This document shows positions 3,001 through 17,504 of a stretch of 64,000 bases of DNA, in pieces. The position numbers and the translations under genes were made by a program. The notes under the pieces are model-generated. The model searched no databases and had not been told where the DNA came from. It saw nothing but the letters and a program-made list of their open reading frames with translations. Every line of letters starts with the position of its first letter. The stretch's first letter is position 1. Origin of the DNA: Magallana gigas (lineage: Eukaryota); NCBI RefSeq assembly GCF_963853765.1, contig NC_088858.1, positions 9,114,001-9,178,000 of the forward strand. Reading direction: 5' to 3'.

Positions 3001-6000
3001 TTTAAGAAATACAGTTGAAACTTTCAATGTATTTATTAATGTGTTTATCTTTTAGTAATTAAAAAATGAACATGTCAAGTATAGGAATCGCAAGTCAAAA
3101 GTGGGAAGCAAAATGGCACCCAAAAACGAAGTTTTACTCAGTGGAAAAATTTCTGATTGTATGTCATGCCTATAAGTCGGACCCCTACTTTTCATTCAAA
3201 TTTCTTCTCCCAAAATACCGACTTATAAGCGAGTATATACGGTATATGAAGATCGTTGGGTTGATTTGTAGAACCAACAAGGCCAAGAATGGGAATGGCA
3301 ATGTAGCAGAGGAGGAAGAGAATGAAGGACTAGCCATGTTAATACCTAATATCCAGGAAACTGCGAAAATTGTCAAGATTGCTGCAGAGAGGCTACAAAA
3401 GTTAACTGGTACATATAATTAAGAATACATTGACAATTGCATATCATTTTGACAAGTTTTGATATTGATCTTTCTGTCTGTCAATCGTATATCCTTTGCC
3501 TTGAATCCAATTAATTCTTAAATCTAGCTTAAATTTCGAAAACAGAGTGATTTTGGATAAAGATGTAAACTGACTTAAAATCAAATATCAGGGTCAAAAC
3601 AGATCTGCTTGAAGTCCTTCTCATGAGCACATTCTTCCAATCCCCCTATGTGCAAACTGGCTATTGTTGTATCCCTAATGTTTTGTTTCTAGAATCAGAG
3701 AGCAGCAGTGAGGAGATGGACAAGGATAAGGCGGGGCAGGCCGGCCAGGCCAGTGTGGAGGAGCATTACATGACTGTCATGCAGGAGGAGCAATTCGGTG
3801 AGTAGCAAGCTTCACCTAGGTAACATTCTGATGAAGGTCAAACTACTGTAGATTCCTAATTAAACGGAATGAATATCCAAGTAAAATTGTATGAAGTACC
3901 CGTCACAGATTTAAAAATCTCACTTTTATTTACTGAGAGTTAAAAACTAAAAGAGATTAGGGTTAAACTCAGTCACTGAATTCACTCAATTCTCAATCAC
4001 GATTTTATACCGGTGTCATATAATATTTTGATACCGCGAAATATTGAACCCGGGTTCAATATATTATGCGATATTATGAACCCGGGTTCAAAATATCGCT
4101 GCGATATATTGAACCCCCCCATAAAATATTGAACCACGGGTTCAAAATATTATGGCCGCGATATTTTGAAACCCTCTCGAATTTTCACTGCTCTTGGAGA
4201 GGGGGTTCAAAATATTATGGCCGCGATATATTGAACCCCCTTCCTTTTTCCAATTTCCTTTGGAGAGGGGGTTCAAAATATTATGGCTGCTATATATTGA
4301 ACCCCCCTCCTTTTTTTATTGCTATTGGAGAGGGGGTTCAAAATATTATGGCTGCGATATATTGAACCCCCTACCTATTTCCAATTCCTATTGGAGAGGG
4401 GGTTCAAAATATTATGGCTGCGATATATTGAACCCCCTACTGTTTCCAATTTCCTTTGGAGAAGGGGTTCAAAATATTATGGCTGCGATATTTTGAACCC
4501 CCTACCTATTTCCAATTCCCATTGGAGAGGGGGTTCAAAATATCATGGCCGCGATATATTGAACCCCCCTCCTTTTTTTATTGCTATTGGAGAGGGGGTT
4601 CAAAATATTATGGCTGCGATATATTGAACACCCTACTATTTCCAATTCCCATTGGAGAGGGGGTTCAAAATATTATGGCTGCGATATATTGAACCCCCTA
4701 CTGTTTCCAATTTCCTTTGGAGAGGGGGTTCAAAATGTTATGGCTGCGATATTTTGAACCCCCTACCTATTTCCAATTCCCATTGGAGAGGGGGTTCAAA
4801 ATATTATGGCTGCGATGTATTGAACCCCCCTCCTTTTTTGATTGCTATTGGAGAGGGGGTTCAAAATATTATGGCTGCGATATATTGAACCCCCTACCTA
4901 TTTCCAATTCCTATTGGAGAGGGGGTTCAAAATATTATGGCTGCGATATATTGAACCCCCTACTGTTTCCAATTTCCTTTGGAGAGGGGGTTCAAAATAT
5001 TATGGCTGCAATATTTTGAACCCCCTACCTATTTCCAATTCCCATTGGAGAGGGGGTTCAAAATATTATGGCTGCGATATATTGAACCCCCCTCCTTTTT
5101 TTATTGCTATTGGAGAGGGGGTTCAAAATATTATGGCTGTGATATATTGAACACCCTACTATTTCCAATTCCCATTGGAGAGGGGGTTCAAAATATCATG
5201 GCTGCGATATATTGAACCCCCCTCCTTTTTTTATTGCTATTGGAGAGGGGGTTCAAAATATTATGGCTGCGATATATTGAACACCCTACTATTTCCAATT
5301 CCCATTGGAGAGGGGGTTCAAAATATTATGGCTGCGATATATTGAACCCCCTACTGTTTCCAATTTCCTTTGGAGAGGGGGTTCAAAATGTTATGGCTGC
5401 GATATTTTGAACCCCCTACCTATTTCCAATTCCCATTGGAGAGGGGGTTCAAAATATTATGGCTGCGATGTATTGAACCCCCCTCCTTTTTTGATTGCTA
5501 TTGGAGAGGGGGTTCAAAATATTATGGCTGCGATATATTGAACCCCCTACCTATTTCCAATTCCTATTGGAGAGGGGGTTCAAAATATTATGGCTGCGAT
5601 ATATTGAACCCCCTACTGTTTCCAATTTCCTTTGGAGAGGGGGTTCAAAATGTTATGGCTGCGATATTTTGAACCCCCTACCTATTTCCAATTCCCATTG
5701 GAGAGGGGGTTCAAAATATTATGGCTGCGATATATTGAACCCCCCTCCTTTTTTGATTGCTATTGGAGAGGGGGTTCAAAATATTATGGCTGCGATATAT
5801 TGAACACCCTACTATTTCCAATTCCCATTGGAGAGGGGGTTCAAAATATTATGGCTGCGATATATTGAACCCCCTACTGTTTCAATTTTTCCTTTGGAAA
5901 GGGGGTTCAAAATATTATGGCTGCGATATTTTGAACCCCCTACCTATTTCCAATTCCCATTGGAGAGGGGGTTCAAAATATTATGGATGCGATATATTGA

Positions 6001-9000
6001 ACCCCCCTCCTTTTTTGATTGCTATTGGAGAGGGGGTTCAAAATATTATGGCTGCGATATATTGAACCCCCTTCCTATTTCCAATTCCCATTGGAGAGGG
6101 GGTTCAAAATATCATGGCTGCGATATATTGAACCCCCCTCCTTTTTTTATTGCTATTGGAGAGGGGGTTCAAAATATTATGGCTGCGATATATTGAACAC
6201 CCTACTATTTCCAATTCCCATTGGAGAGGGGGTTCAAAATATTATGGCTGCGATATATTGAACCCCCTACTGTTTCCAATTTCCTTTGGAGAGGGGGTTC
6301 AAAATGTTATGGCTGCGATATTTTGAACCCCCTACCTATTTCCAATTCCCATTGGAGAGGGGGTTCAAAATATTATGGCTGCGATGTATTGAACCCCCCT
6401 CCTTTTTTGATTGCTATTGGAGAGGGGGTTCAAAATATTATGGCTGCGATATATTGAACCCCCTACCTATTTCCAATTCCTATTGGAGAGGGGGTTCAAA
6501 ATATTATGGCTGCGATATATTGAACCCCCTACTGTTTCCAATTTCCTTTGGAGAGGGGGTTCAAAATATTATGGCTGCGATATTTTGAACCCCCTACCTA
6601 TTTCCAATTCCCATTGGAGAGGGGGTTCAAAATATTATGGCTGCGATATATTGAACCCCCCTCCTTTTTTTATTGCTATTGGAGAGGGGGTTCAAAATAT
6701 TATGGCTGCGATATATTGAACACCCTACTATTTCCAATTCCCATTGGAGAGGGGGTTCAAAATATTATGGCTGCAATATATTGAACCCCCTACTGTTTCC
6801 AATTTCCTTTGGAGAGGGGGTTCAAAATATTATGGCTGCGATATTTTGAACCCCCTACCTATTTCCAATTCCCATTGGAGAGGGGGTTCAAAATATTATG
6901 GCTGCGATATATTGAACCCCCCTCCTTTTTTGATTGCTATTGGAGAGGGGGTTCAAAATATTATGGCTGCGATATATTGAACCCCCTTCCTATTTCCAAT
7001 TCCCATTGGATAGGGGGTTCAAAATATTATGGCTGCGATATATTGAACCCCCTACTGTTTCTAATATCCTTTGGAGAGGGGGTTCAAAATATTATGGCTG
7101 CGATATTTTGAACCCCCTCTCCAATGGGAATTGGAAATAGGTAGGGGGTTCAATATATCGCAGCCATAATATTTTGAACCCCCTCTCCAATAGCAATCAA
7201 AAAAGGAGGGGGGTTCAATATATCGCAGCCATAATATTTTGAACCCCCTCTCCAATGGGAATTGGAAATAGGTAGGGGGTTCAAAATATCATGGCCATAA
7301 TATTTTGAACCCCCTCTCCAATGGGAATTGGAAAAAGGTAGGGGGTTCAATATATCGCGGCCATAATATTTTGAACCCCCTCTCCAATAGCAATGAAAAA
7401 AAGAGGGGGTTCAAAATATCGCGGCCATAACATTTTGAACTCCCTCTCCAATAGCAATGAAAAATAGAGGGGGGTTCAAAATATCGCGGCCATGATATTT
7501 TGAACCCCCTATCCAATGGGAATTGGAAAAATAGAGGGGGGTTCAAAATATCATGGCCATAATATTTTGAACCCCTTCTCCAATAGCAATGAAAAATAGA
7601 GGGGGGTTCAAAATATCGCGGCCATAATATTTTGAACCCCCTCTCCAATGGGAATTGGAAATAGGTAGGGGGTTCAATATATCGCAGCCATAATATTTTG
7701 AACCCCCTCTCCAATAGCAATCAAAAAAGGAGGGGGGTTCAATATATCGCAGCCATAATATTTTGAACCCCCTCTCCAATGGGAATTGGAAATAGGTAGG
7801 GGGTTCAAAATATCATGGCCATAATATTTTGAACCCCCTCTCCAATGGGAATTGGAAAAAGGTAGGGGGTTCAATATATCGCGGCCATAATATTTTGAAC
7901 CCCCTCTCCAATAGCAATGAAAAAAAGAGGGGGTTCAAAATATCGCGGCCATAACATTTTGAACTCCCTCTCCAATAGCAATGAAAAATAGAGGGGGGTT
8001 CAAAATATCGCGGCCATGATATTTTGAACCCCCTATCCAATGGGAATTGGAAAAATAGAGGGGGGTTCAAAATATCATGGCCATAATATTTTGAACCCCT
8101 TCTCCAATAGCAATGAAAAATAGAGGGGGGTTCAAAATATCGCGGCCATAATATTTTGAACCTCCTATCCAATGGGAATTGGAAAAAGGTAGGGGGTTCA
8201 ATATATCGCAGCCATAATATTTTGAACCAATGAAAAATAAAGGGGGGTTCATAATATCGCGGCCATAATATTTTGAACCCCTTCTCCAATAGCAATGAAA
8301 AATAGAGGGGGGTTCAAAATATCGCGGCCATAATATTTTGAACCTCCTATCCAATGGGAATTGGAAAAAGGTAGGGGGTTCAATATATCGCAGCCATAAT
8401 ATTTTGAACCAATGAAAAATAAAGGGGGGTTCATAATATCGCGGCCATAATATTTTGAACCCCCTCTTCAATAGCAATGAAAAAAAGAGGGGGGTTCAAA
8501 ATATCATGGCCATAATATTTTGAACCTCCTCTCCAATGGGAATTGGAAAAAGGTTGGGGGTTCAATATATCGCGGCCATAATATTTTGAACCCCCTCTCC
8601 AATAGCAATGAAAAAAAGAGGGGGTTCAAAATATCGCGGCCATAACATTTTGAACCCCCTCTCCAATACCAATGAAAAATAGAGGGGGTTCAAAATATCG
8701 CTGCCATAATATTTTGAACCCCCTATCCAATAGCAATGAAAAATAGAGGGGGGTTCAAAATATCGCGGCCATAATATTTTGAACCCCCTCTCCAATGGGA
8801 ATTGGAAAAAGGTAGGGGGTTCAATATATCGCAGCCATAATATTTTGAAACCCCTCTCCAATACCAATGAAAAATAAAGGGGGGTTCAAAATATCGCAGG
8901 CCATAATATTTTGAACCCCCTATCCAATGGGAATTGGAAAAAGGTAGGGGGTTCAATATATCGCGGCCATAATATTTTGAACCCCCTCTCCAATACCAAT

Positions 9001-11210
9001 GAAAAATAGAGGGGGGTTCAAAATATCGCGGCCATAAAATATTGAACCTGGGTTCAATATTTTATGGGGGGGTTCAATATATCGCAGCGATATTTTGAAC
9101 CCGGGTTCAATATATCGCGGGGTTCAAAATATTATATGACACCGGTAATCTCACAATTTAATACAAAACAGCGGGATCACGGAATTAAATACTCTCGTAA
9201 AATAAGGAATTTACAGTAATATACAGTGACATTTGGTTATCTCAGACCGAACGGGTTAAAAAAAAGTTTTGTTATTGGAGAGCTTGAGATGAAGAGGTTA
9301 AAATATTAAAGAAAAAGTGGTTCGAAATTCTAACTCATTCAACATACATGTATCCATGGCATTTGAGTAGAAGACCTTTGAGATATCAATGTTCAACTGT
9401 ACATGTTCATGTGATTTTTCACACTGCATGTGTAGATCTGTGATCATAGGTAAAGAAATTATTTATATGTATTTTCAGGTTCATTTGAGTTTGTTTTGAG
9501 TGATTCAAGTGTGGTAAAGTTTACGTGTTCACACCATTATGAAAATAACGTGAAGGCAGCAGGTGACGTGAGCAATGCTTCTCGCACGCGCCGCCTGGCC
9601 CAGGAAGCCACGACCCTATCTACCTCACTTCCTCTCTCAGGCGGCAGCACTGTGTTTGTCAGGTGTGATGAGGAGAGGCTCGATATCATGAAGGTAATGT
9701 TTTAACACATTGAGACAACCGGGTACTCTGGAATCATTAGAAATCAGGGTGGCTTAGTTTTATTAGGTTTTGAACATAGTCCCTCTCCCACGAACTAGCA
9801 TGCCCAATGAAAAACGAAACAGTTATTATATGCATGTATAATTGCATAAAATCCACAAAATTACATTTCCACCAACCTGTAAGAATTTGACAATCCCCAA
9901 GAGTTGATTCCCATGGATTTAAATGATTCCACTGTATTTTCAATAATTTTATTTCTTTTATAATTCGGTATATTTTTGACATATAAACATGTATTTGAAT
10001 GTGAGTATTTACTGTGATTGTAGGTGATGATAACAGGGCCTTCAGACACTCCATATGAAAATGGCTGCTTCGAGTTTGATGTGTATTTCCCTCCAGATTA
10101 CCCTACATCTCCACCCTTAATAAACCTAGAGACCACAGGGAACCACACCATCCGATTCAACCCCAATCTGTATAATGACGGAAAGGTTCGAATTCCCTTG
10201 ATTTATGTCGACTTCAAAAGTTTTCTTAAATGTGTAGCTAAGTTATATGGTGTTAATATTCTTGTTTTATTTTAAAGGTATGTTTAAGTGTTTTAAACAC
10301 ATGGCATGGAAGACCAGAGGAAAAATGGAATGCTCAGACATCAAGCTTTTTACAGGTTAGTTTATCACCTGTCTTGAACTTGTCTTATTCTTAAAATCAT
10401 TTTTGAATTCACATGCCAGTATGTTTTGATCTTTGTATTGAACTGAAACAACATTAATGGTTATGATTTGACGCTCTCTAGGTGTTGGTATCCATCCAGT
10501 CACTGATTTTAGTGTCTGAGCCGTACTTTAATGAGCCAGGATATGAACGATCTCGAGGGACTCCTTCAGGCACAGCCAGCTCTCGAGAATATGATGCTAA
10601 TATCCGACAAGCTACAGTCAGATGGGCCATGCTGGAACAAATCCGGAACCCAACACCTTGCTTTCGTGAAGTCATCCACAAACACTTCTGGCTGAAGAGA
10701 CACGAGGTTCTAAAGCAGTGTGAAAATTGGATAGCAGAGATGGAGTCATATAGCAATGATAAAAGAACTGGAAGAACTATTGCTCACAGTACTCTGGCAC
10801 TTAAAGTAAGCATCATTCTAATCAATTTAAGAAAAATTCAATACTAGAGTTGATTGGTGTAAAATTTTAATTTATGTAAATAGAGATTTGAATAAAATAA
10901 AAAATTAAAGGAGTTGAGTATTTTGATTCGGTAAATGTACATACATGCATATCTTTTTTTTATCCTTTTATGCATATTTATCATGTCATTACAGAGACAT
11001 TATAACCAGTTAAGAGAGGAAATAGCAAAGATGAAGCCCCCTGAGGGGCTGGAGGACGAGGAAGGGGGTGAGAGCATTGATCCTCAGGGCGTTCACTTCT
11101 CCACCGACTCGGCGTTGTCGTCGGCCATGAACAGTTCCCAGTTAGCCGTCATAGAAAACCTCATCACCGACTCTAATTCCAATTCCGTTCTAGAGGATGG
11201 ATTTTGCTGA
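37..11210 (+). CDS. BIRC6: Baculoviral IAP repeat-containing protein 6 (BRUCE/Apollon), 3' part including the UBC (E2) domain; 5' end lies outside the window
   Basis: Phase-consistent GT-AG exons: 37-213, 367-565, 682-896, 1134-1334, 1471-1829, 3272-3408, 3693-3797, 9479-9693, 10024-10185, 10278-10355, 10482-10805, 10995-11210 (TGA), plus a possible 12-nt microexon at 1039-1050. Peptides match recalled BIRC6: [87 protein letters not shown] (catalytic Cys in exon 10278-10355). AATAAA at 12043-12048. Confidence 0.97.
2063..3242. mobile_element. Non-autonomous TIR DNA transposon (Tc1/mariner-pogo-like) in a BIRC6 intron
   Basis: 22-bp TIR with one mismatch (CCGTATATACTCGCCTATAAGT / ACTTATAAGCGAGTATATACGG), TA on both sides (2061-2062, 3243-3244), repeated subterminal TATAAGTCGG motif, and a diverged internal duplication (about 2325-2570 vs about 2735-2960). 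Confidence 0.8.
4010..9145. mobile_element. Foldback-type non-autonomous element: giant inverted repeat made of about 65-bp hairpin monomers
   Basis: Termini CCGGTGTCATATAATATTTTGA / TCAAAATATTATATGACACCGG flanked by TA (4008-4009, 9146-9147). Monomers run in one orientation to about 7092 and inverted from 7103. The centre is a perfect 22-bp stem (7071-7092 / 7103-7124) around a 10-nt loop. No transposase ORF. Confidence 0.85.
4190..9010. repeat. Tandem array of 65-66-bp monomers with a roughly 523-bp (8-monomer) higher-order period
   Basis: Conserved core TTGGAGAGGGGGTTCAAAATATTATGGCTGCGATATATTGAACCCCC plus 3-4 recurring linker variants. Near-identical shadow ORFs recur at offsets of 523 (4319/4842, 4456/4979, 6221/6744, 6411/6934) and 524 on the right arm (7289/7813, 7543/8067). 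Confidence 0.95.
9224..9399. mobile_element. Short degenerate MITE (CAGT...ACTG termini, TA flanks)
   Basis: TACAGTGACATTTGGTTATCTC at 9222 and GAGATATCAATGTTCAACTGTA ending 9401 are imperfect inverted termini. Confidence 0.45.
9724..9936. mobile_element. About 210-bp MITE, copy 1
   Basis: TACTCTGGAATCATT ... AATGATTCCACTGTA termini. Shares termini and an internal CCCACGAAC motif with the copy at 12194-12411. Confidence 0.6.
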
Positions 11211-14444: not shown

Positions 14445-15694
14445 ATGTCTGCGCCAACTACTGAGGACTTTAGATCGCAGGGACTCGGTAAGTAACGTGG
14501 CTGACTTCTATTGTCTTTTTCCAAAAAAAATTTTAGATTTTTTAAAATCTAATCATTTTGTAAAAGACCGAATTTCAAACAACTGAGACTGCAAGAAGAG
14601 AACGAGTTAATGTTCCAAAATGTAGAGATATTCAAATCATTTGGTTCTCTTTTCAGTTCATTTCGCCCCAGCATACTCCTTACTTATTTTTGGGTCTTCA
14701 ACTTCACTTAGTAAACGCTTATGCGATTTCCTTCGACATGGACCAAGGAGGGGAGGTTGTCAAATCTATTGCCAAAGTGTACGTCGGGGGCTTGACGGAA
14801 AACGTGGAGAAATATCACTTGGAGGAGCTATTTGAACGATTTGGGTTAGTTAAAACAGTGTGGATTGCGAGGAATCCTCTTTCTAGGGGATATGCTTTTG
14901 TCACATTTTTCGATCCAAAACATGCAGAGGAGGCAGTTAAAGGATTAAACGGCACGGCCCTGCAAGGATCTAAACTGAAGGTGCAGCTGTCTAAAAATGA
15001 AATTGTGAAAGTAGAAAATGAACACAAAGACAGGGACAGAGACCCGAGGGACCACACCAACCAGCGGAGACATCGCTCGAGGGACCGGAACCAGTACATG
15101 GACCGGAAGCGAGGCAGGTCCGGGGATAGAGATAGATCTCCGATGGACAGGAAGTACGACGATGACCAAGACACACGTGATATCTCATCTCCGACCCTGG
15201 ACCCAGTAGTGATTCAGGAATCCCTGATGTTACGAGAGGCCGTGCTTCGGTCAGGCCTATCGCCGTATTCCTTCATTACAAACTCCCTTCTCCAAACCGC
15301 AGCCCTACCGAGTCTTCCACTTCCGTGTATGAAATCGCCCGCTTTTGGGACAACGTTAAATTACATGCCTTATCCCCACGTTGTGGGCGACACATTCGGT
15401 GACTTGCGCCGACACGGAGACATTTCTTCACAAATGGCCGGTCCGAATATTGTTCTACAGACTTCACGAACTGCTCCCCCCTCCGTTGCGTACACTACTG
15501 CCATGACAGGCATCCGGTCACCCTTCCTACAAGCTTCAACTGCTATTCCTACTCCACAATATCAAAACAGGATTAATCGTACGACTTCGTCTATGAAGCC
15601 ATCTGAATTCATCCCCAGCGGTTGTACCAGTGATCCGGTCCCGCAGATAGGTGTGTGTACATCGCAGGGAAACGAAACTGGCTATCCTTGCTGA
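14445..15694 (+). CDS. SRSF3/SRSF7 (SRp20/9G8/RBP1)-like RRM protein with a short RD/RS segment and a long P/S/T-rich tail
   Basis: Uninterrupted ORF 14690-15694. RRM KVYVGGL...VWIARNPLSRGYAFVTF resembles SRSF3 KVYVGNL...VWVARNPPGFAFVEF. Candidate first exon 14445-14487 (ATG, MSAPTTEDFRSQGL, donor GTAAGT at 14488) joins in phase 1 to the TAG acceptor ending 14711. The first Met of the large exon (MDQGG) is an alternative start. AATAAA at about 15997-16002. Confidence 0.8.
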
Positions 15695-16589: not shown

Positions 16590-17504
16590 TTAATCGTGTT
16601 TACATTCACCATGTTCTTTTTTGTTATTGCGTTTTTGGTAATCCTCAAACAAAGGGTCATAGTACATTGGTAATGGGGCTGGAACAAAGACAGACAATAT
16701 CCAGTACTTCCCAAATATGTCGACAAAGTTTCTATAGTAGGATTTCCCCGTATGCCTGGCTATACCCCTTCTTGCTTCGTGTGTCGTCTGCCCAGAAATC
16801 ACAAGGAGCACGTGCCAGAACCACAACGAGGCTGCAATCATCCCAGCAGTCAGCGAACAATACATCAAGATTACCAGAAACAAGAACTTCTCGTTGGGAT
16901 AGTGTTCTGTCAAGAATCCATAAACTAAATCGTATATAATTGTAATGAAGGTTTGTGGTCCATAAAATGTCGTGTTGAACAGCAACTTCAGGTACATCAC
17001 AATCAGAAACATGCCATAGAATGTTCCCACCATCATGTAGAAACAAAACATCACGAAGTATCTGTGGTTAAAGTACCCTATACAGACGGTCATGAAAAAG
17101 CAGTGGTGGTCCCGCTTCAGAACACAAGCCTCGCACAGATAGCAGTGATGGGTTCTGGCGGGAACAGCCTCGTGACACACGGCGCAGTTTTTGAATTCCT
17201 TGGTCTTCAGTACTTTTTTCTTCAATTCTTGACTTAGTCGGTGGATACTCGTATTCGTTCCCAGAATAAGGACACAGTTCCCCATGGCGTTCATGAAGAC
17301 GAAAGAGATCACAATTTTATGGGATGTGATGGAGTCCGGTTTGTGTGGGTACAGGTTTGGCAAGATCTCAAACCACGCAAGCGCCGTGACTGTAAAAGTC
17401 ACCACCAGGAAATACAGCATGCAAAAGATGCTGCCTAGCGCCATCAGGCGGGTTTGAACCTTGGTCCCCCGACATCGGCACAGTATTCTGATCGCCTGTA
17501 TCAT
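16590..17504 (-). CDS. DHHC-type palmitoyltransferase, most like the ZDHHC22/24 group; single coding exon
   Basis: 304-aa ORF with the cysteine-rich domain CAVCHEAVPARTHHCYLCEACVLKRDHHCFFMTVCIG and about 4 hydrophobic segments. A splice acceptor (TGTTTACTGTTTACAG) lies 9 nt before the ATG, implying an upstream non-coding exon. Confidence 0.9.
   Translation of the reverse strand: MIQAIRILCRCRGTKVQTRLMALGSIFCMLYFLVVTFTVTALAWFEILPNLYPHKPDSITSHKIVISFVFMNAMGNCVLILGTNTSIHRLSQELKKKVLKTKEFKNCAVCHEAVPARTHHCYLCEACVLKRDHHCFFMTVCIGYFNHRYFVMFCFYMMVGTFYGMFLIVMYLKLLFNTTFYGPQTFITIIYDLVYGFLTEHYPNEKFLFLVILMYCSLTAGMIAASLWFWHVLLVISGQTTHEARRGIARHTGKSYYRNFVDIFGKYWILSVFVPAPLPMYYDPLFEDYQKRNNKKEHGECKHD

What the first reader, a model, noticed from the sequence alone, without database searches (positions are those of the whole stretch)
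4008..9147. 5.1-kb fractal foldback element inside a BIRC6 intron
Seen: palindromy at three nested scales. TTGAACCCGGGTTCAA units make up the termini, each 65-bp monomer is itself a hairpin (GGGGGTTCAA...TTGAACCCCC), and the whole element is one inverted repeat (left arm about 3.1 kb, right arm about 2.05 kb). It turns on a single monomer with a perfect 22-bp stem at 7071-7124, has TA flanks, and contains no coding or unique internal DNA. Known: foldback transposons have long TIRs built from tandem subrepeats. Inference: this is a loop-less foldback family acting as a mobile satellite seed. The BIRC6 pre-mRNA could fold a roughly 2-kb duplex directly upstream of the UBC exons (ADAR or Dicer substrate, splicing effects), and the DNA could extrude cruciforms.
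Basis: partly seen in the sequence, partly recalled or inferred. Interest (0 to 1): 0.72.

Follow-up and report, generated by a model that had tools for sequence, protein, structure and literature searches.

The report
Ginger1-type foldback transposon carrying CgiSat24
The 5.1-kb hairpin in the oyster BIRC6 intron is a real, recently inserted, gene-less jumping element of the Ginger1 type, and its two inverted arms are arrays of the published "orphan" oyster satellite CgiSat24; it is a new example of a known kind of element, not a new kind.

Summary
Window 4010-9145 is one inverted repeat: about 45 forward and 28 reverse 65/66-bp monomers, turning on a 22-bp hairpin at about 7071-7124. The right arm pairs with the left at about 90% over 2 kb.

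Parts of the interpretation need correcting.
- The duplicated target is CCGG (4 bp), not TA. All 48 distinct ends in hand are preceded by CCGG, and a nested copy restores its host exactly when one CCGG is kept. The element proper is TGTCA...TGACA (4014-9141). A CCGG duplication plus TGTNR ends is the published signature of Ginger1 transposons.
- The monomer is the published Crassostrea gigas satellite CgiSat24, listed there with no transposon link. About 55 young copies hold apparently all of it.
- The family is not loop-less. At least 27 genome places hold all or part of a 350-460-bp central loop, and nearly all lie in or beside family copies. Loop-less copies turn at different points.
- This insertion is polymorphic. 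Contigs from three other oyster DNA studies read straight across the empty site TA-CCGG-TA.

No transposase partner was found. Effects on BIRC6 RNA remain untested.

The scan has already reported sister foldback families in this genome, carrying CgiSat33, CgiSat25 and CgiSat15.

The parts
3693..3801 (+). BIRC6 exon just upstream of the intron that holds the element
   Evidence: PolyA RNA reads of X21 cover 3692-3800. 19 reads carry the upstream exon's sequence before 3692, and depth falls to 0 after 3800. The neighbouring exons match human BIRC6.
4008..4009 (.). TA flank: part of the preferred target TA-CCGG-TA, not a duplication
   Evidence: 32 of 48 distinct family ends have TA outside the CCGG. 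The empty allele reads TA-CCGG-TA.
4010..4013 (.). Left copy of the 4-bp target-site duplication CCGG
   Evidence: 48 of 48 ends are preceded by CCGG. The nested copy in L041 restores its host with a single CCGG. The empty allele has one CCGG.
4014..4137 (+). Left terminus: starts TGTCATATAATATTTTGA, then 32-bp units each centred on the palindrome TTGAACCCGGGTTCAA (4044-4059, 4076-4091, degenerate copy about 4128-4144)
   Evidence: It is 97-100% identical at 41 or more other genome places. It has one more 32-bp unit than the right terminus.
4138..7122 (-). Left arm: about 45 CgiSat24 monomers (reverse complement of the published consensus), with higher-order periods of 131, 523 and 1569 bp
   Evidence: 15 consensus hits at 3 or fewer mismatches, all on the - strand.
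7071..7124 (.). Turn: one monomer's own hairpin (22-bp stem, 10-nt loop) where the orientation flips
   Evidence: The same turn, with the same diagnostic neighbouring variant, is found in copy L035 on another chromosome.
7078..9048 (+). Right arm: about 28 CgiSat24 monomers in the orientation of the published consensus
   Evidence: 4 consensus hits, all on the + strand.
9042..9141 (-). Right terminus, with palindromes at 9042-9057 (1 mismatch) and 9095-9110, ending ...TCAAAATATTATATGACA
9142..9145 (.). Right copy of the CCGG target-site duplication
9146..9147 (.). TA flank (target preference)
9479..9693 (+). Next BIRC6 exon; the acceptor after the cag at 9476-9478 is inferred from the sequence
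   Evidence: Its translation matches human BIRC6 residues about 4551-4614 at E = 6e-20. Sequence.
10024..10275 (+). BIRC6 UBC-domain exon
   Evidence: Pfam UQ_con PF00179, E = 1e-15. The following exon, 10482-10847, matches the BIRC6 UBC structure 3ceg at E = 4e-56.

Best explanation
This is a non-autonomous cut-and-paste DNA transposon of the Ginger1 type with foldback architecture. The element proper runs from 4014 to 9141 (TGTCA...TGACA). It inserted into a CCGG within TA-CCGG-TA and duplicated that CCGG.

It encodes nothing. I infer that it is moved in trans by a Gypsy-integrase-like Ginger1 transposase encoded elsewhere, and that this enzyme binds the ends and probably the subterminal 16-bp palindromes TTGAACCCGGGTTCAA.

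The 65/66-bp monomer looks like a 32-bp terminal unit split at the centre of its palindrome by a spacer of about 25 nt (TTGAACCCCC-spacer-GGGGGTTCAA). Tandem copies of this monomer form both arms, and the monomer is the catalogued satellite CgiSat24. Between copies, arm length changes by whole monomers. The centre is unstable: an ancestral 350-460-bp loop has been lost several times, at different points.

The BIRC6 copy is a recent, unfixed insertion that enlarges a 545-nt intron to 5677 nt.

Shown: the architecture, the duplication, the ends, the copy number, the identity with CgiSat24, and the empty allele. Inferred: the enzyme, the role of the palindromes, and how the arrays and the centre change.
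For: Family:
- 41 or more places match the left 131-135 nt at 97-100% identity on nine chromosome-scale contigs (C1-C9).
- There are 107 ends with at most 1 mismatch and 0 in the reversed-pattern control.
- 19 complete copies (this one plus 18 of the 20 fetched loci) show the same forward-then-reverse architecture, at 1.0-7.6 kb.

Duplication and ends:
- 48 of 48 distinct ends are preceded by CCGG.
- The nested copy in L041 sits in TTGAACC[CCGG]GTTCAA. Removing it together with one CCGG gives exactly the uninterrupted terminus seen in L036.
- L044 has a paralogous empty site with a single CCGG and no TA.
- Ginger1 is defined by 4-bp duplications that are CCGG in 75% of cases and by TGTNR ends (PMC2836005).

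Satellite:
- The CgiSat24 consensus (PMC8268682, supplement) matches exactly at 6 places and within 3 mismatches at 19 places, on opposite strands in the two arms.
- 100 of 100 listed genome hits of a monomer 32-mer lie inside loci bounded by family ends.
- About 55 copies times about 50 monomers comes to roughly 2750, against 2740-2829 monomers in the paper's Table 2.

Polymorphism:
- Contigs of X2, X5 and X6 (three studies) run from the left flank through TA-CCGG-TA into the right flank. X6 continues for 2747 nt. The letters that follow in X2 equal window 9147 onward.

Array change:
- Sister copies are 95-98.7% identical and differ by insertions or deletions of 64-66, 130-132, 196-197, 260-263 and about 500-525 nt.

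Centre:
- Turn points differ between copies, two of them (L043, L031) are perfect palindromes, and L039 keeps a remnant of the loop.
Against: - No autonomous partner with these ends was found, and no Ginger1-type transposase was tied to the family.
The 11-kb copy at C3:23773784-23784753 and the unpaired ends could therefore not be read.
- The internal structure of this particular copy rests on one assembly; no long read across it was available.
- Logan contigs show that an allele is present, not that another is absent. The three samples may also carry the filled allele.
- Published Ginger1 inverted repeats are 40-270 bp, far shorter than these arms.
- I could not search Repbase or Dfam, so the family may already be catalogued there.
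Confidence: 0.85

Rival explanations
1. It is a Tc1/mariner-like element with a TA duplication and CCGG... ends, and the TA-CCGG-TA alleles in other oysters are excision footprints that keep two bases from each end.
For: TA flanks 32 of 48 ends. TA-CC-GG-TA has the shape of a classic Tc1 footprint (my own knowledge of Tc1 and Sleeping Beauty footprints). The empty allele was seen.
Against: - Nested copies in L041 and L043 have flanks ACC|CCGG and CCGG|GTT with no TA, and the host is restored only if one CCGG belongs to the host.
- L044 has an empty paralogous site GA-CCGG-GT with no TA.
- The same 'footprint' in three of three unrelated samples is better explained as the ancestral empty site.
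Confidence: 0.03
2. It is a foldback element that targets CCGG but is moved by some other enzyme: an undescribed superfamily, or an LTR-retrotransposon integrase acting on TG...CA ends.
For: No Ginger1 transposase was linked to the family. Membership rests on the duplication and the ends alone.
Against: The pairing of a 4-bp CCGG duplication with TGTNR ends is reported as specific to Ginger1. Ginger2 prefers RTATAY, and GingerRoot makes 6-bp duplications with TA...TA ends. Ginger transposases are present in molluscs, bivalves included (PMC10294476), and one C. gigas satellite is already annotated as Ginger1-related.
Confidence: 0.08
3. It is an assembly artefact or a local inverted duplication of a satellite array, and not a discrete mobile element.
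For: Long palindromes are prone to assembly error, and no spanning long read was examined.
Against: The same architecture with the same ends and CCGG duplications occurs at 18 other fetched loci on seven contigs. A precise empty site exists in other individuals. Short-read contigs of other samples hold the terminus sequences.
Confidence: 0.02
4. One reading: in carriers, the intronic 2-kb hairpin acts at the RNA level (editing, small RNAs, altered BIRC6 splicing) or extrudes cruciforms that matter to the host.
For: The predicted RNA and DNA hairpins are extremely stable. The element sits 212 nt from the splice donor and enlarges the intron tenfold. PolyA RNA reads matching family ends and monomers occur on both strands. 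The varied centre deletions across copies fit breakage of hairpins in vivo.
Against: There were no RNA reads in this locus's own intron flank, 3802-3999. Reads inside the element cannot be assigned among about 55 copies. The genotype of the RNA sample is unknown, and the allele is not fixed. Nothing indicates selection for the insertion.
Confidence: 0.1

Closest known systems
Ginger1 DNA transposons (Bao, Kapitonov and Jurka 2010, PMC2836005)
   Same: 4-bp target-site duplication that is specifically CCGG; ends follow TGTNR...YNACA (here TGTCA...TGACA); terminal inverted repeats; non-autonomous copies sharing the ends are known.
   Different: Described inverted repeats are 40-270 bp, whereas here the arms are 1-6 kb of satellite monomers and make up nearly the whole element. 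No integrase-like transposase (with an OTU or Ulp1 domain) was found for this family.
Foldback elements of Drosophila: FB, Galileo, and Tetris of D. virilis (Dias et al. 2014, cited in PMC8268682)
   Same: Long inverted arms built of tandem subrepeats; arm lengths vary between copies; little or no middle; no coding capacity in most copies; the subrepeats double as a satellite (Tetris).
   Different: They belong to other superfamilies with 7-9-bp duplications (from my own knowledge). Here the duplication is CCGG and the ends are Ginger1-type.
CgiSat24, a 66-bp satellite of Crassostrea gigas (Tunjic-Cvitanic et al. 2021, PMC8268682)
   Same: The sequence is identical: exact consensus matches in both arms. 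It occurs on all ten chromosomes, and the monomer count is about the same.
   Different: The paper lists no transposon similarity for it and did not examine its flanks. Here every listed monomer hit that was checked (100 of 100, on C1-C3) lies inside a foldback element with defined ends.
Helentron/Helitron-borne satellite arrays of oysters (Cg_HINE, pearl/CvA; PMC7492417)
   Same: Short satellite arrays are scattered over the genome by a non-autonomous mobile element.
   Different: Those elements use rolling-circle transposition, carry arrays in one orientation in the centre, and have no inverted repeats or duplication. Here two inverted arrays reach almost to the ends of a cut-and-paste element.
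Other oyster foldback families reported earlier by this scan (carrying CgiSat33, CgiSat25, CgiSat15)
   Same: Same genome and same design: gene-less or nearly gene-less foldbacks whose arms are a published 'orphan' satellite.
   Different: Different satellites, ends and duplications (for example GAGG...CCTC with 7 bp). I did not check those reports myself.

Membership tests
Ginger1 superfamily | 4-bp target-site duplication, specifically CCGG (or CCGT/ACGG) | tested here: met
   48 of 48 ends are preceded by CCGG. The nested copy restores its host with one CCGG. The empty allele has one CCGG. Definition taken from PMC2836005.
Ginger1 superfamily | Ends follow TGTNR...YNACA | tested here: met
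   TGTCA at 4014 and TGACA ending at 9141; the same in all copies.
Ginger1 superfamily | Terminal inverted repeats | tested here: met
   The outer 22 nt are identical and the first 400 nt are 92% alike, apart from one extra 32-bp unit on the left. They are much longer than the 40-270 bp described.
Ginger1 superfamily | Moved by a Gypsy-integrase-like transposase (YPYY, H2C2, DDE, GPY/F, plus OTU or Ulp1) in an autonomous relative with the same ends | tested here: inconclusive
   There is no coding frame in the 20 fetched loci. Peptidase_C48, OTU and Integrase_H2C2 scans of the genome gave no hit inside a family copy. Further copies could not be fetched.
Foldback-type transposon (structural class) | Inverted arms make up nearly the whole element and are built of tandem subrepeats | tested here: met
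Foldback-type transposon (structural class) | Copies vary in arm length, with a small or absent middle | tested here: met
   Lengths are 1.0-7.6 kb, and differences come in monomer multiples. A 350-460-bp loop is present in 5 of 19 complete copies and, whole or in part, at about 27 genome places; it is absent here.
Tc1/mariner superfamily | TA target-site duplication | tested here: not met
   Nested copies and L044 lack TA, and the duplication is CCGG.
CgiSat24 satellite | Monomer sequence matches the published 66-bp consensus | tested here: met
   6 exact hits and 19 within 3 mismatches in the window, against 0 expected.
Helitron/Helentron-associated satellite | Arrays flanked by Helitron end boxes, with no inverted repeats and no duplication | tested here: not met
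   The arrays are bounded by inverted ends and a CCGG duplication.

The most novel reading that the evidence does not exclude
This may be the first Ginger1-superfamily foldback. It would be a currently active lineage in the Pacific oyster whose probable transposase-binding palindrome, which contains Ginger1's own CCGG target, was split and multiplied into a satellite. On this reading the whole of the 'orphan' satellite CgiSat24 is transposon arms. The family inserts into its own terminal palindromes, and the varied turn points of its copies are a natural record of how an animal genome breaks and mends long palindromes.
Probability: 0.45. Interest if true: 0.55.

Novelty: new member of a known kind. 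Interest (0 to 1): 0.42.

Why it matters
- It gives an origin and a means of spread to an oyster satellite published without any link to a mobile element. It also adds a non-Helitron route to the scattered satellite pattern of oyster genomes.
- It extends Ginger1, a little-studied superfamily related to retroviral integrases, to a foldback design with kilobase arms.
- The empty allele is evidence of recent Ginger1-type insertion in a farmed species.
- The roughly 55 copies, with their different centres and monomer-step length changes, are usable material for studying how long palindromes are tolerated and trimmed in vivo.
- For BIRC6 itself, the insertion is a segregating tenfold intron expansion. 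Its effect, if any, could be tested by comparing carriers with non-carriers.

Tried and rejected
Readings rejected:
- TA duplication and Tc1/mariner: rejected by the nested copy and the paralogous empty site.
- Assembly artefact: rejected at family level.
- Coding capacity: the long open frames in the arrays are stop-poor repeat frames only.

Search for the autonomous partner, which failed:
- There is no coding sequence in the 20 fetched 10-kb loci. L048 is a solo 130-bp terminus next to host exons.
- Peptidase_C48 gave 31 genome hits, none inside a family copy.
- OTU hits are more than 100 open frames of about 2700 aa, which I guess are Helentron proteins.
- Integrase_H2C2 gave 1497 candidates, most of them probably LTR-retrotransposon (Gypsy-type) integrases.
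I did not try to read those letters by another route.

Other steps that led nowhere:
Long-read support and editing could not be assessed.
- Scan notes by place and by sequence held nothing for this family.
- The literature held no paper on CgiSat24 beyond its catalogue entry, and none joining Ginger1 with foldback architecture.


Full report
**1. The observation**

- Tandem Repeats Finder reports a 65-bp array (131-bp dimer) at 4138-7122 and the reverse-oriented array at 7078-9048.
- The repeat finder lists 1318 inverted pairs, with arms up to 404 nt at 91-93% complementarity.
- The non-palindromic spacer serves as an orientation marker. By it the element has 45 forward monomers, then 28 reverse ones, with a single switch.
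- Aligned outward from the centre, the arms are complementary at 96.5% over 200 nt, 92% over 1 kb and 90% over the entire 2049-nt right arm. About 1 kb of the left arm has no partner in register.
- The centre folds as a 22-bp stem with a 10-nt loop. The 296-nt core reaches -133 kcal/mol as DNA (z = -27), and 996 nt reach -787 kcal/mol as RNA (z = -61).
- The palindrome TTGAACCCGGGTTCAA stands twice near each end, against 0.03 expected by chance.
- The left arm also has higher-order periods of 523 and 1569 bp.

**2. The setting**

- The exon at 1459-1887 matches human BIRC6 residues about 4325-4459 (E = 7e-39).
- The exon at about 9479-9693 matches residues 4551-4614.
- The exon at 10482-10847 matches the BIRC6 UBC domain (E = 4e-56).
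- The exon at 10024-10275 hits Pfam UQ_con.
- RNA reads place an exon at 3693-3801.

The intron therefore runs from about 3802 to 9478. That is 5677 nt, of which 5132 are the element plus one copy of its duplication.

**3. It is a family**

- The left 135 nt match 41 or more other places at 97-100% identity on contigs C1-C9.
- A 24-nt end pattern has 107 matches at up to 1 mismatch, and none for the reversed control.
- I fetched 20 further loci. Eighteen hold a complete copy of 1.0-7.6 kb with the same forward-then-reverse design. One is a solo end and one lacks a recognisable right end.
- The left arm, which is the side whose terminus has one extra 32-bp unit, has more monomers in 16 of 19 copies. 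Copies share ancestry, so this is not 16 independent events.
- Sister copies are 95-98.7% identical. They differ mainly by insertions or deletions of 64-66, 130-132, 196-197, 260-263 and about 500-525 nt, that is, whole monomers.

**4. The target-site duplication is CCGG, not TA**

- All 48 distinct ends I hold are preceded by CCGG. TA lies outside it in 32 of them.
- The decisive case is a copy nested in another copy's terminal palindrome (L041). The flanks read TTGAACC|CCGG|TGTC... and ...GACA|CCGG|GTTCAAAATATT. Removing the inner element together with one CCGG reproduces, letter for letter, the uninterrupted terminus of L036. L043 has a second insertion at the same site.
- L044 carries a paralogous empty site, ttttga-CCGG-gtctttcc, with no TA.

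So the element proper is TGTCATATAAT...ATTATATGACA (4014-9141), and TA-CCGG-TA is a preferred target.

[quoted passage not shown] Both features are met. The related groups differ: Ginger2 prefers RTATAY, and GingerRoot makes 6-bp duplications with TA...TA ends. Ginger transposases are present in molluscs, bivalves included (PMC10294476).

**5. The monomer is a published satellite**

- The 66-bp consensus of CgiSat24, from the supplement of the C. gigas satellitome paper (PMC8268682), matches the window exactly at 6 places and within 3 mismatches at 19. It lies on the minus strand throughout the left arm and on the plus strand in the right arm.
- The paper lists CgiSat24 with no transposon similarity, at 0.04% of the genome, on all ten chromosomes, with 2740-2829 monomers. 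It analysed flanks only for the 11 most abundant satellites.
- A 32-nt monomer pattern has 1284 genome matches here. All 100 that are listed (C1, C2, start of C3) fall inside loci bounded by family ends.
- About 55 copies times about 50 monomers per copy comes to roughly 2750, which is the published count.

I conclude that CgiSat24 is, to a first approximation, nothing but the arms of this transposon family. The exact match also identifies the genome as the Pacific oyster or a very close relative.

**6. The family is not loop-less**

- Five of 19 copies have a homologous non-repeat centre of 350-460 bp. It occurs in two orientations that are also two sequence subgroups: 96-97% identity within a group and 87-92% between groups.
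- A genome search finds all or part of this loop at about 27 places, nearly all of which lie within or beside family copies.
- Loop-less copies turn at different points.
  - The window and L035, on another chromosome, share one turn, together with a diagnostic neighbouring variant.
  - L042 and L047 turn in a hairpin whose loop has the opposite orientation.
  - L043 and L031 have perfectly palindromic centres.
  - L038 turns inside a spacer.
  - L039 keeps about 20 nt of the loop.
  - L032 and L033 share yet another junction.

From this I infer that the loop was lost repeatedly, by breakage and repair at the tip of the hairpin. At least one loop-less form has since transposed (the window and L035).

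**7. This insertion is polymorphic**

- In DNA contigs of three runs from three studies (X2, X5, X6), a single contig covers the flank, passes TA-CCGG-TA and continues into the right flank.
- The letters that follow in X2 are AATCTCACAATTTAATAC..., which equal window 9147 onward.
- The X6 contig goes on for 2747 nt, and the X5 contig is 8 kb long.
- No listed contig joins this flank to the element.

Contigs show that an allele is present, not that another is absent. The firm statement is therefore that the precise empty allele exists in all three samples.

**8. RNA**

- In a polyA RNA run (X21, about 1% of the run read), the exon 3693-3801 is covered and is spliced normally to the upstream exon.
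- The intron flank 3802-3999 has no reads.
- Reads matching the terminus and monomers occur on both strands, but with many different flanks, so they come from many loci.
- An inverted repeat gives both orientations from any read-through transcript, so the two-strand signal says nothing about double-stranded RNA processing.

The proposed effects on BIRC6 RNA remain untested, and they can apply only to carriers.

**9. Mechanism, with what is shown and what is inferred**

Shown:
- The element has cut-and-paste hallmarks of Ginger1: inverted ends, a CCGG duplication and a precise empty site.
- The family is young and the insertion is not fixed.
- Within elements, CCGG occurs only in the terminal palindromes and once in the loop, never in the arrays.
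- The family has inserted into its own palindrome at least twice.

Inferred:
- A Ginger1 integrase-like transposase supplied in trans moves it.
- The 16-bp palindromes are its binding sites.
- The monomer arose when such a palindrome was split by a spacer and the unit was multiplied.
- Arm length drifts by unequal exchange or replication slippage.
- Hairpin or cruciform processing trims the centre.

I found no partner element.

**10. Comparison and novelty**

- The design matches the Drosophila foldback elements FB, Galileo and Tetris, in which tandem subrepeats in long inverted arms also seed a satellite.
- The transposition signature is Ginger1, whose described inverted repeats are only 40-270 bp.
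- I found no paper that joins Ginger1 with foldback architecture, and none on CgiSat24 beyond its catalogue entry. I could not search Repbase or Dfam.
- Earlier notes of this scan report sister foldback families in the same genome that carry CgiSat33, CgiSat25 and CgiSat15 (I did not check them). The pattern is therefore recurrent in this oyster.

I rate this a new member of a known kind, of moderate interest.

Noticed in passing
L041:303-6669 and L043 (G000:C2:13.73 Mb and C2:54.53 Mb): Two independent copies of the family are inserted into the same CCGG of another copy's third terminal palindrome, giving nested or tandem composites up to 8 kb. The family's own ends contain its target site.
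   Followed up: partly
L034, L045, L049 versus L041, L046 (centres); about 27 genome places: The 350-460-bp central loop occurs in both orientations relative to the left terminus. The two orientations are also two sequence subgroups, which suggests one old inversion rather than frequent flipping. A 65-nt piece of the loop is repeated about 350-500 bp away in several copies. Weak (72%) matches at C7:19415210 and C7:19451652 lie outside known copies.
   Followed up: partly
L044:250-1340 (G000:C6:54.467 Mb): The target region is tandemly duplicated, with one empty and one filled copy side by side (A-CCGG-B then A-CCGG-element-CCGG-B). This may be a trace of aberrant transposition or gap repair.
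   Followed up: no
L036 element 473-1232; L040 element 427-1372: Two unrelated insertions of 760 and 946 bp of non-family DNA sit inside left arms. They are probably other mobile elements.
   Followed up: no
19 complete copies: The arm on the side of the longer terminus has more monomers in 16 of 19 copies. This is either inherited from a lopsided master copy or a real bias in array growth.
   Followed up: partly
genome-wide: More than 100 uninterrupted open frames of about 2600-2880 aa contain an OTU protease domain. By size and abundance I guess they are Helentron Rep/helicase proteins, many apparently intact.
   Followed up: no
G000:C3:23744068-23744598 (-) and C1:40373470 (+): Ulp1-type (Peptidase_C48) domains lie inside open frames of 1866 and 1379 aa. 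These are candidates for transposases with a protease domain (Ginger1 or MULE type). The first lies 30 kb from an 11-kb family copy.
   Followed up: no
window 14690-15694 (+) and 16590-17504 (-): Two single-exon-like open frames lie downstream of BIRC6. One of 334 aa has an RNA-recognition-motif-like start, and one of 304 aa has a DHHC palmitoyltransferase motif.
   Followed up: no
window 48001-50000: There is a local rise in G+C (0.42 against about 0.32 around it) with a strong AT skew (0.16).
   Followed up: no
window 3745 and 3775: All RNA reads of run X21 differ from the window in the BIRC6 exon (C>A and T>C). The three DNA runs do not show these differences, so they are probably strain alleles of that sample.
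   Followed up: no
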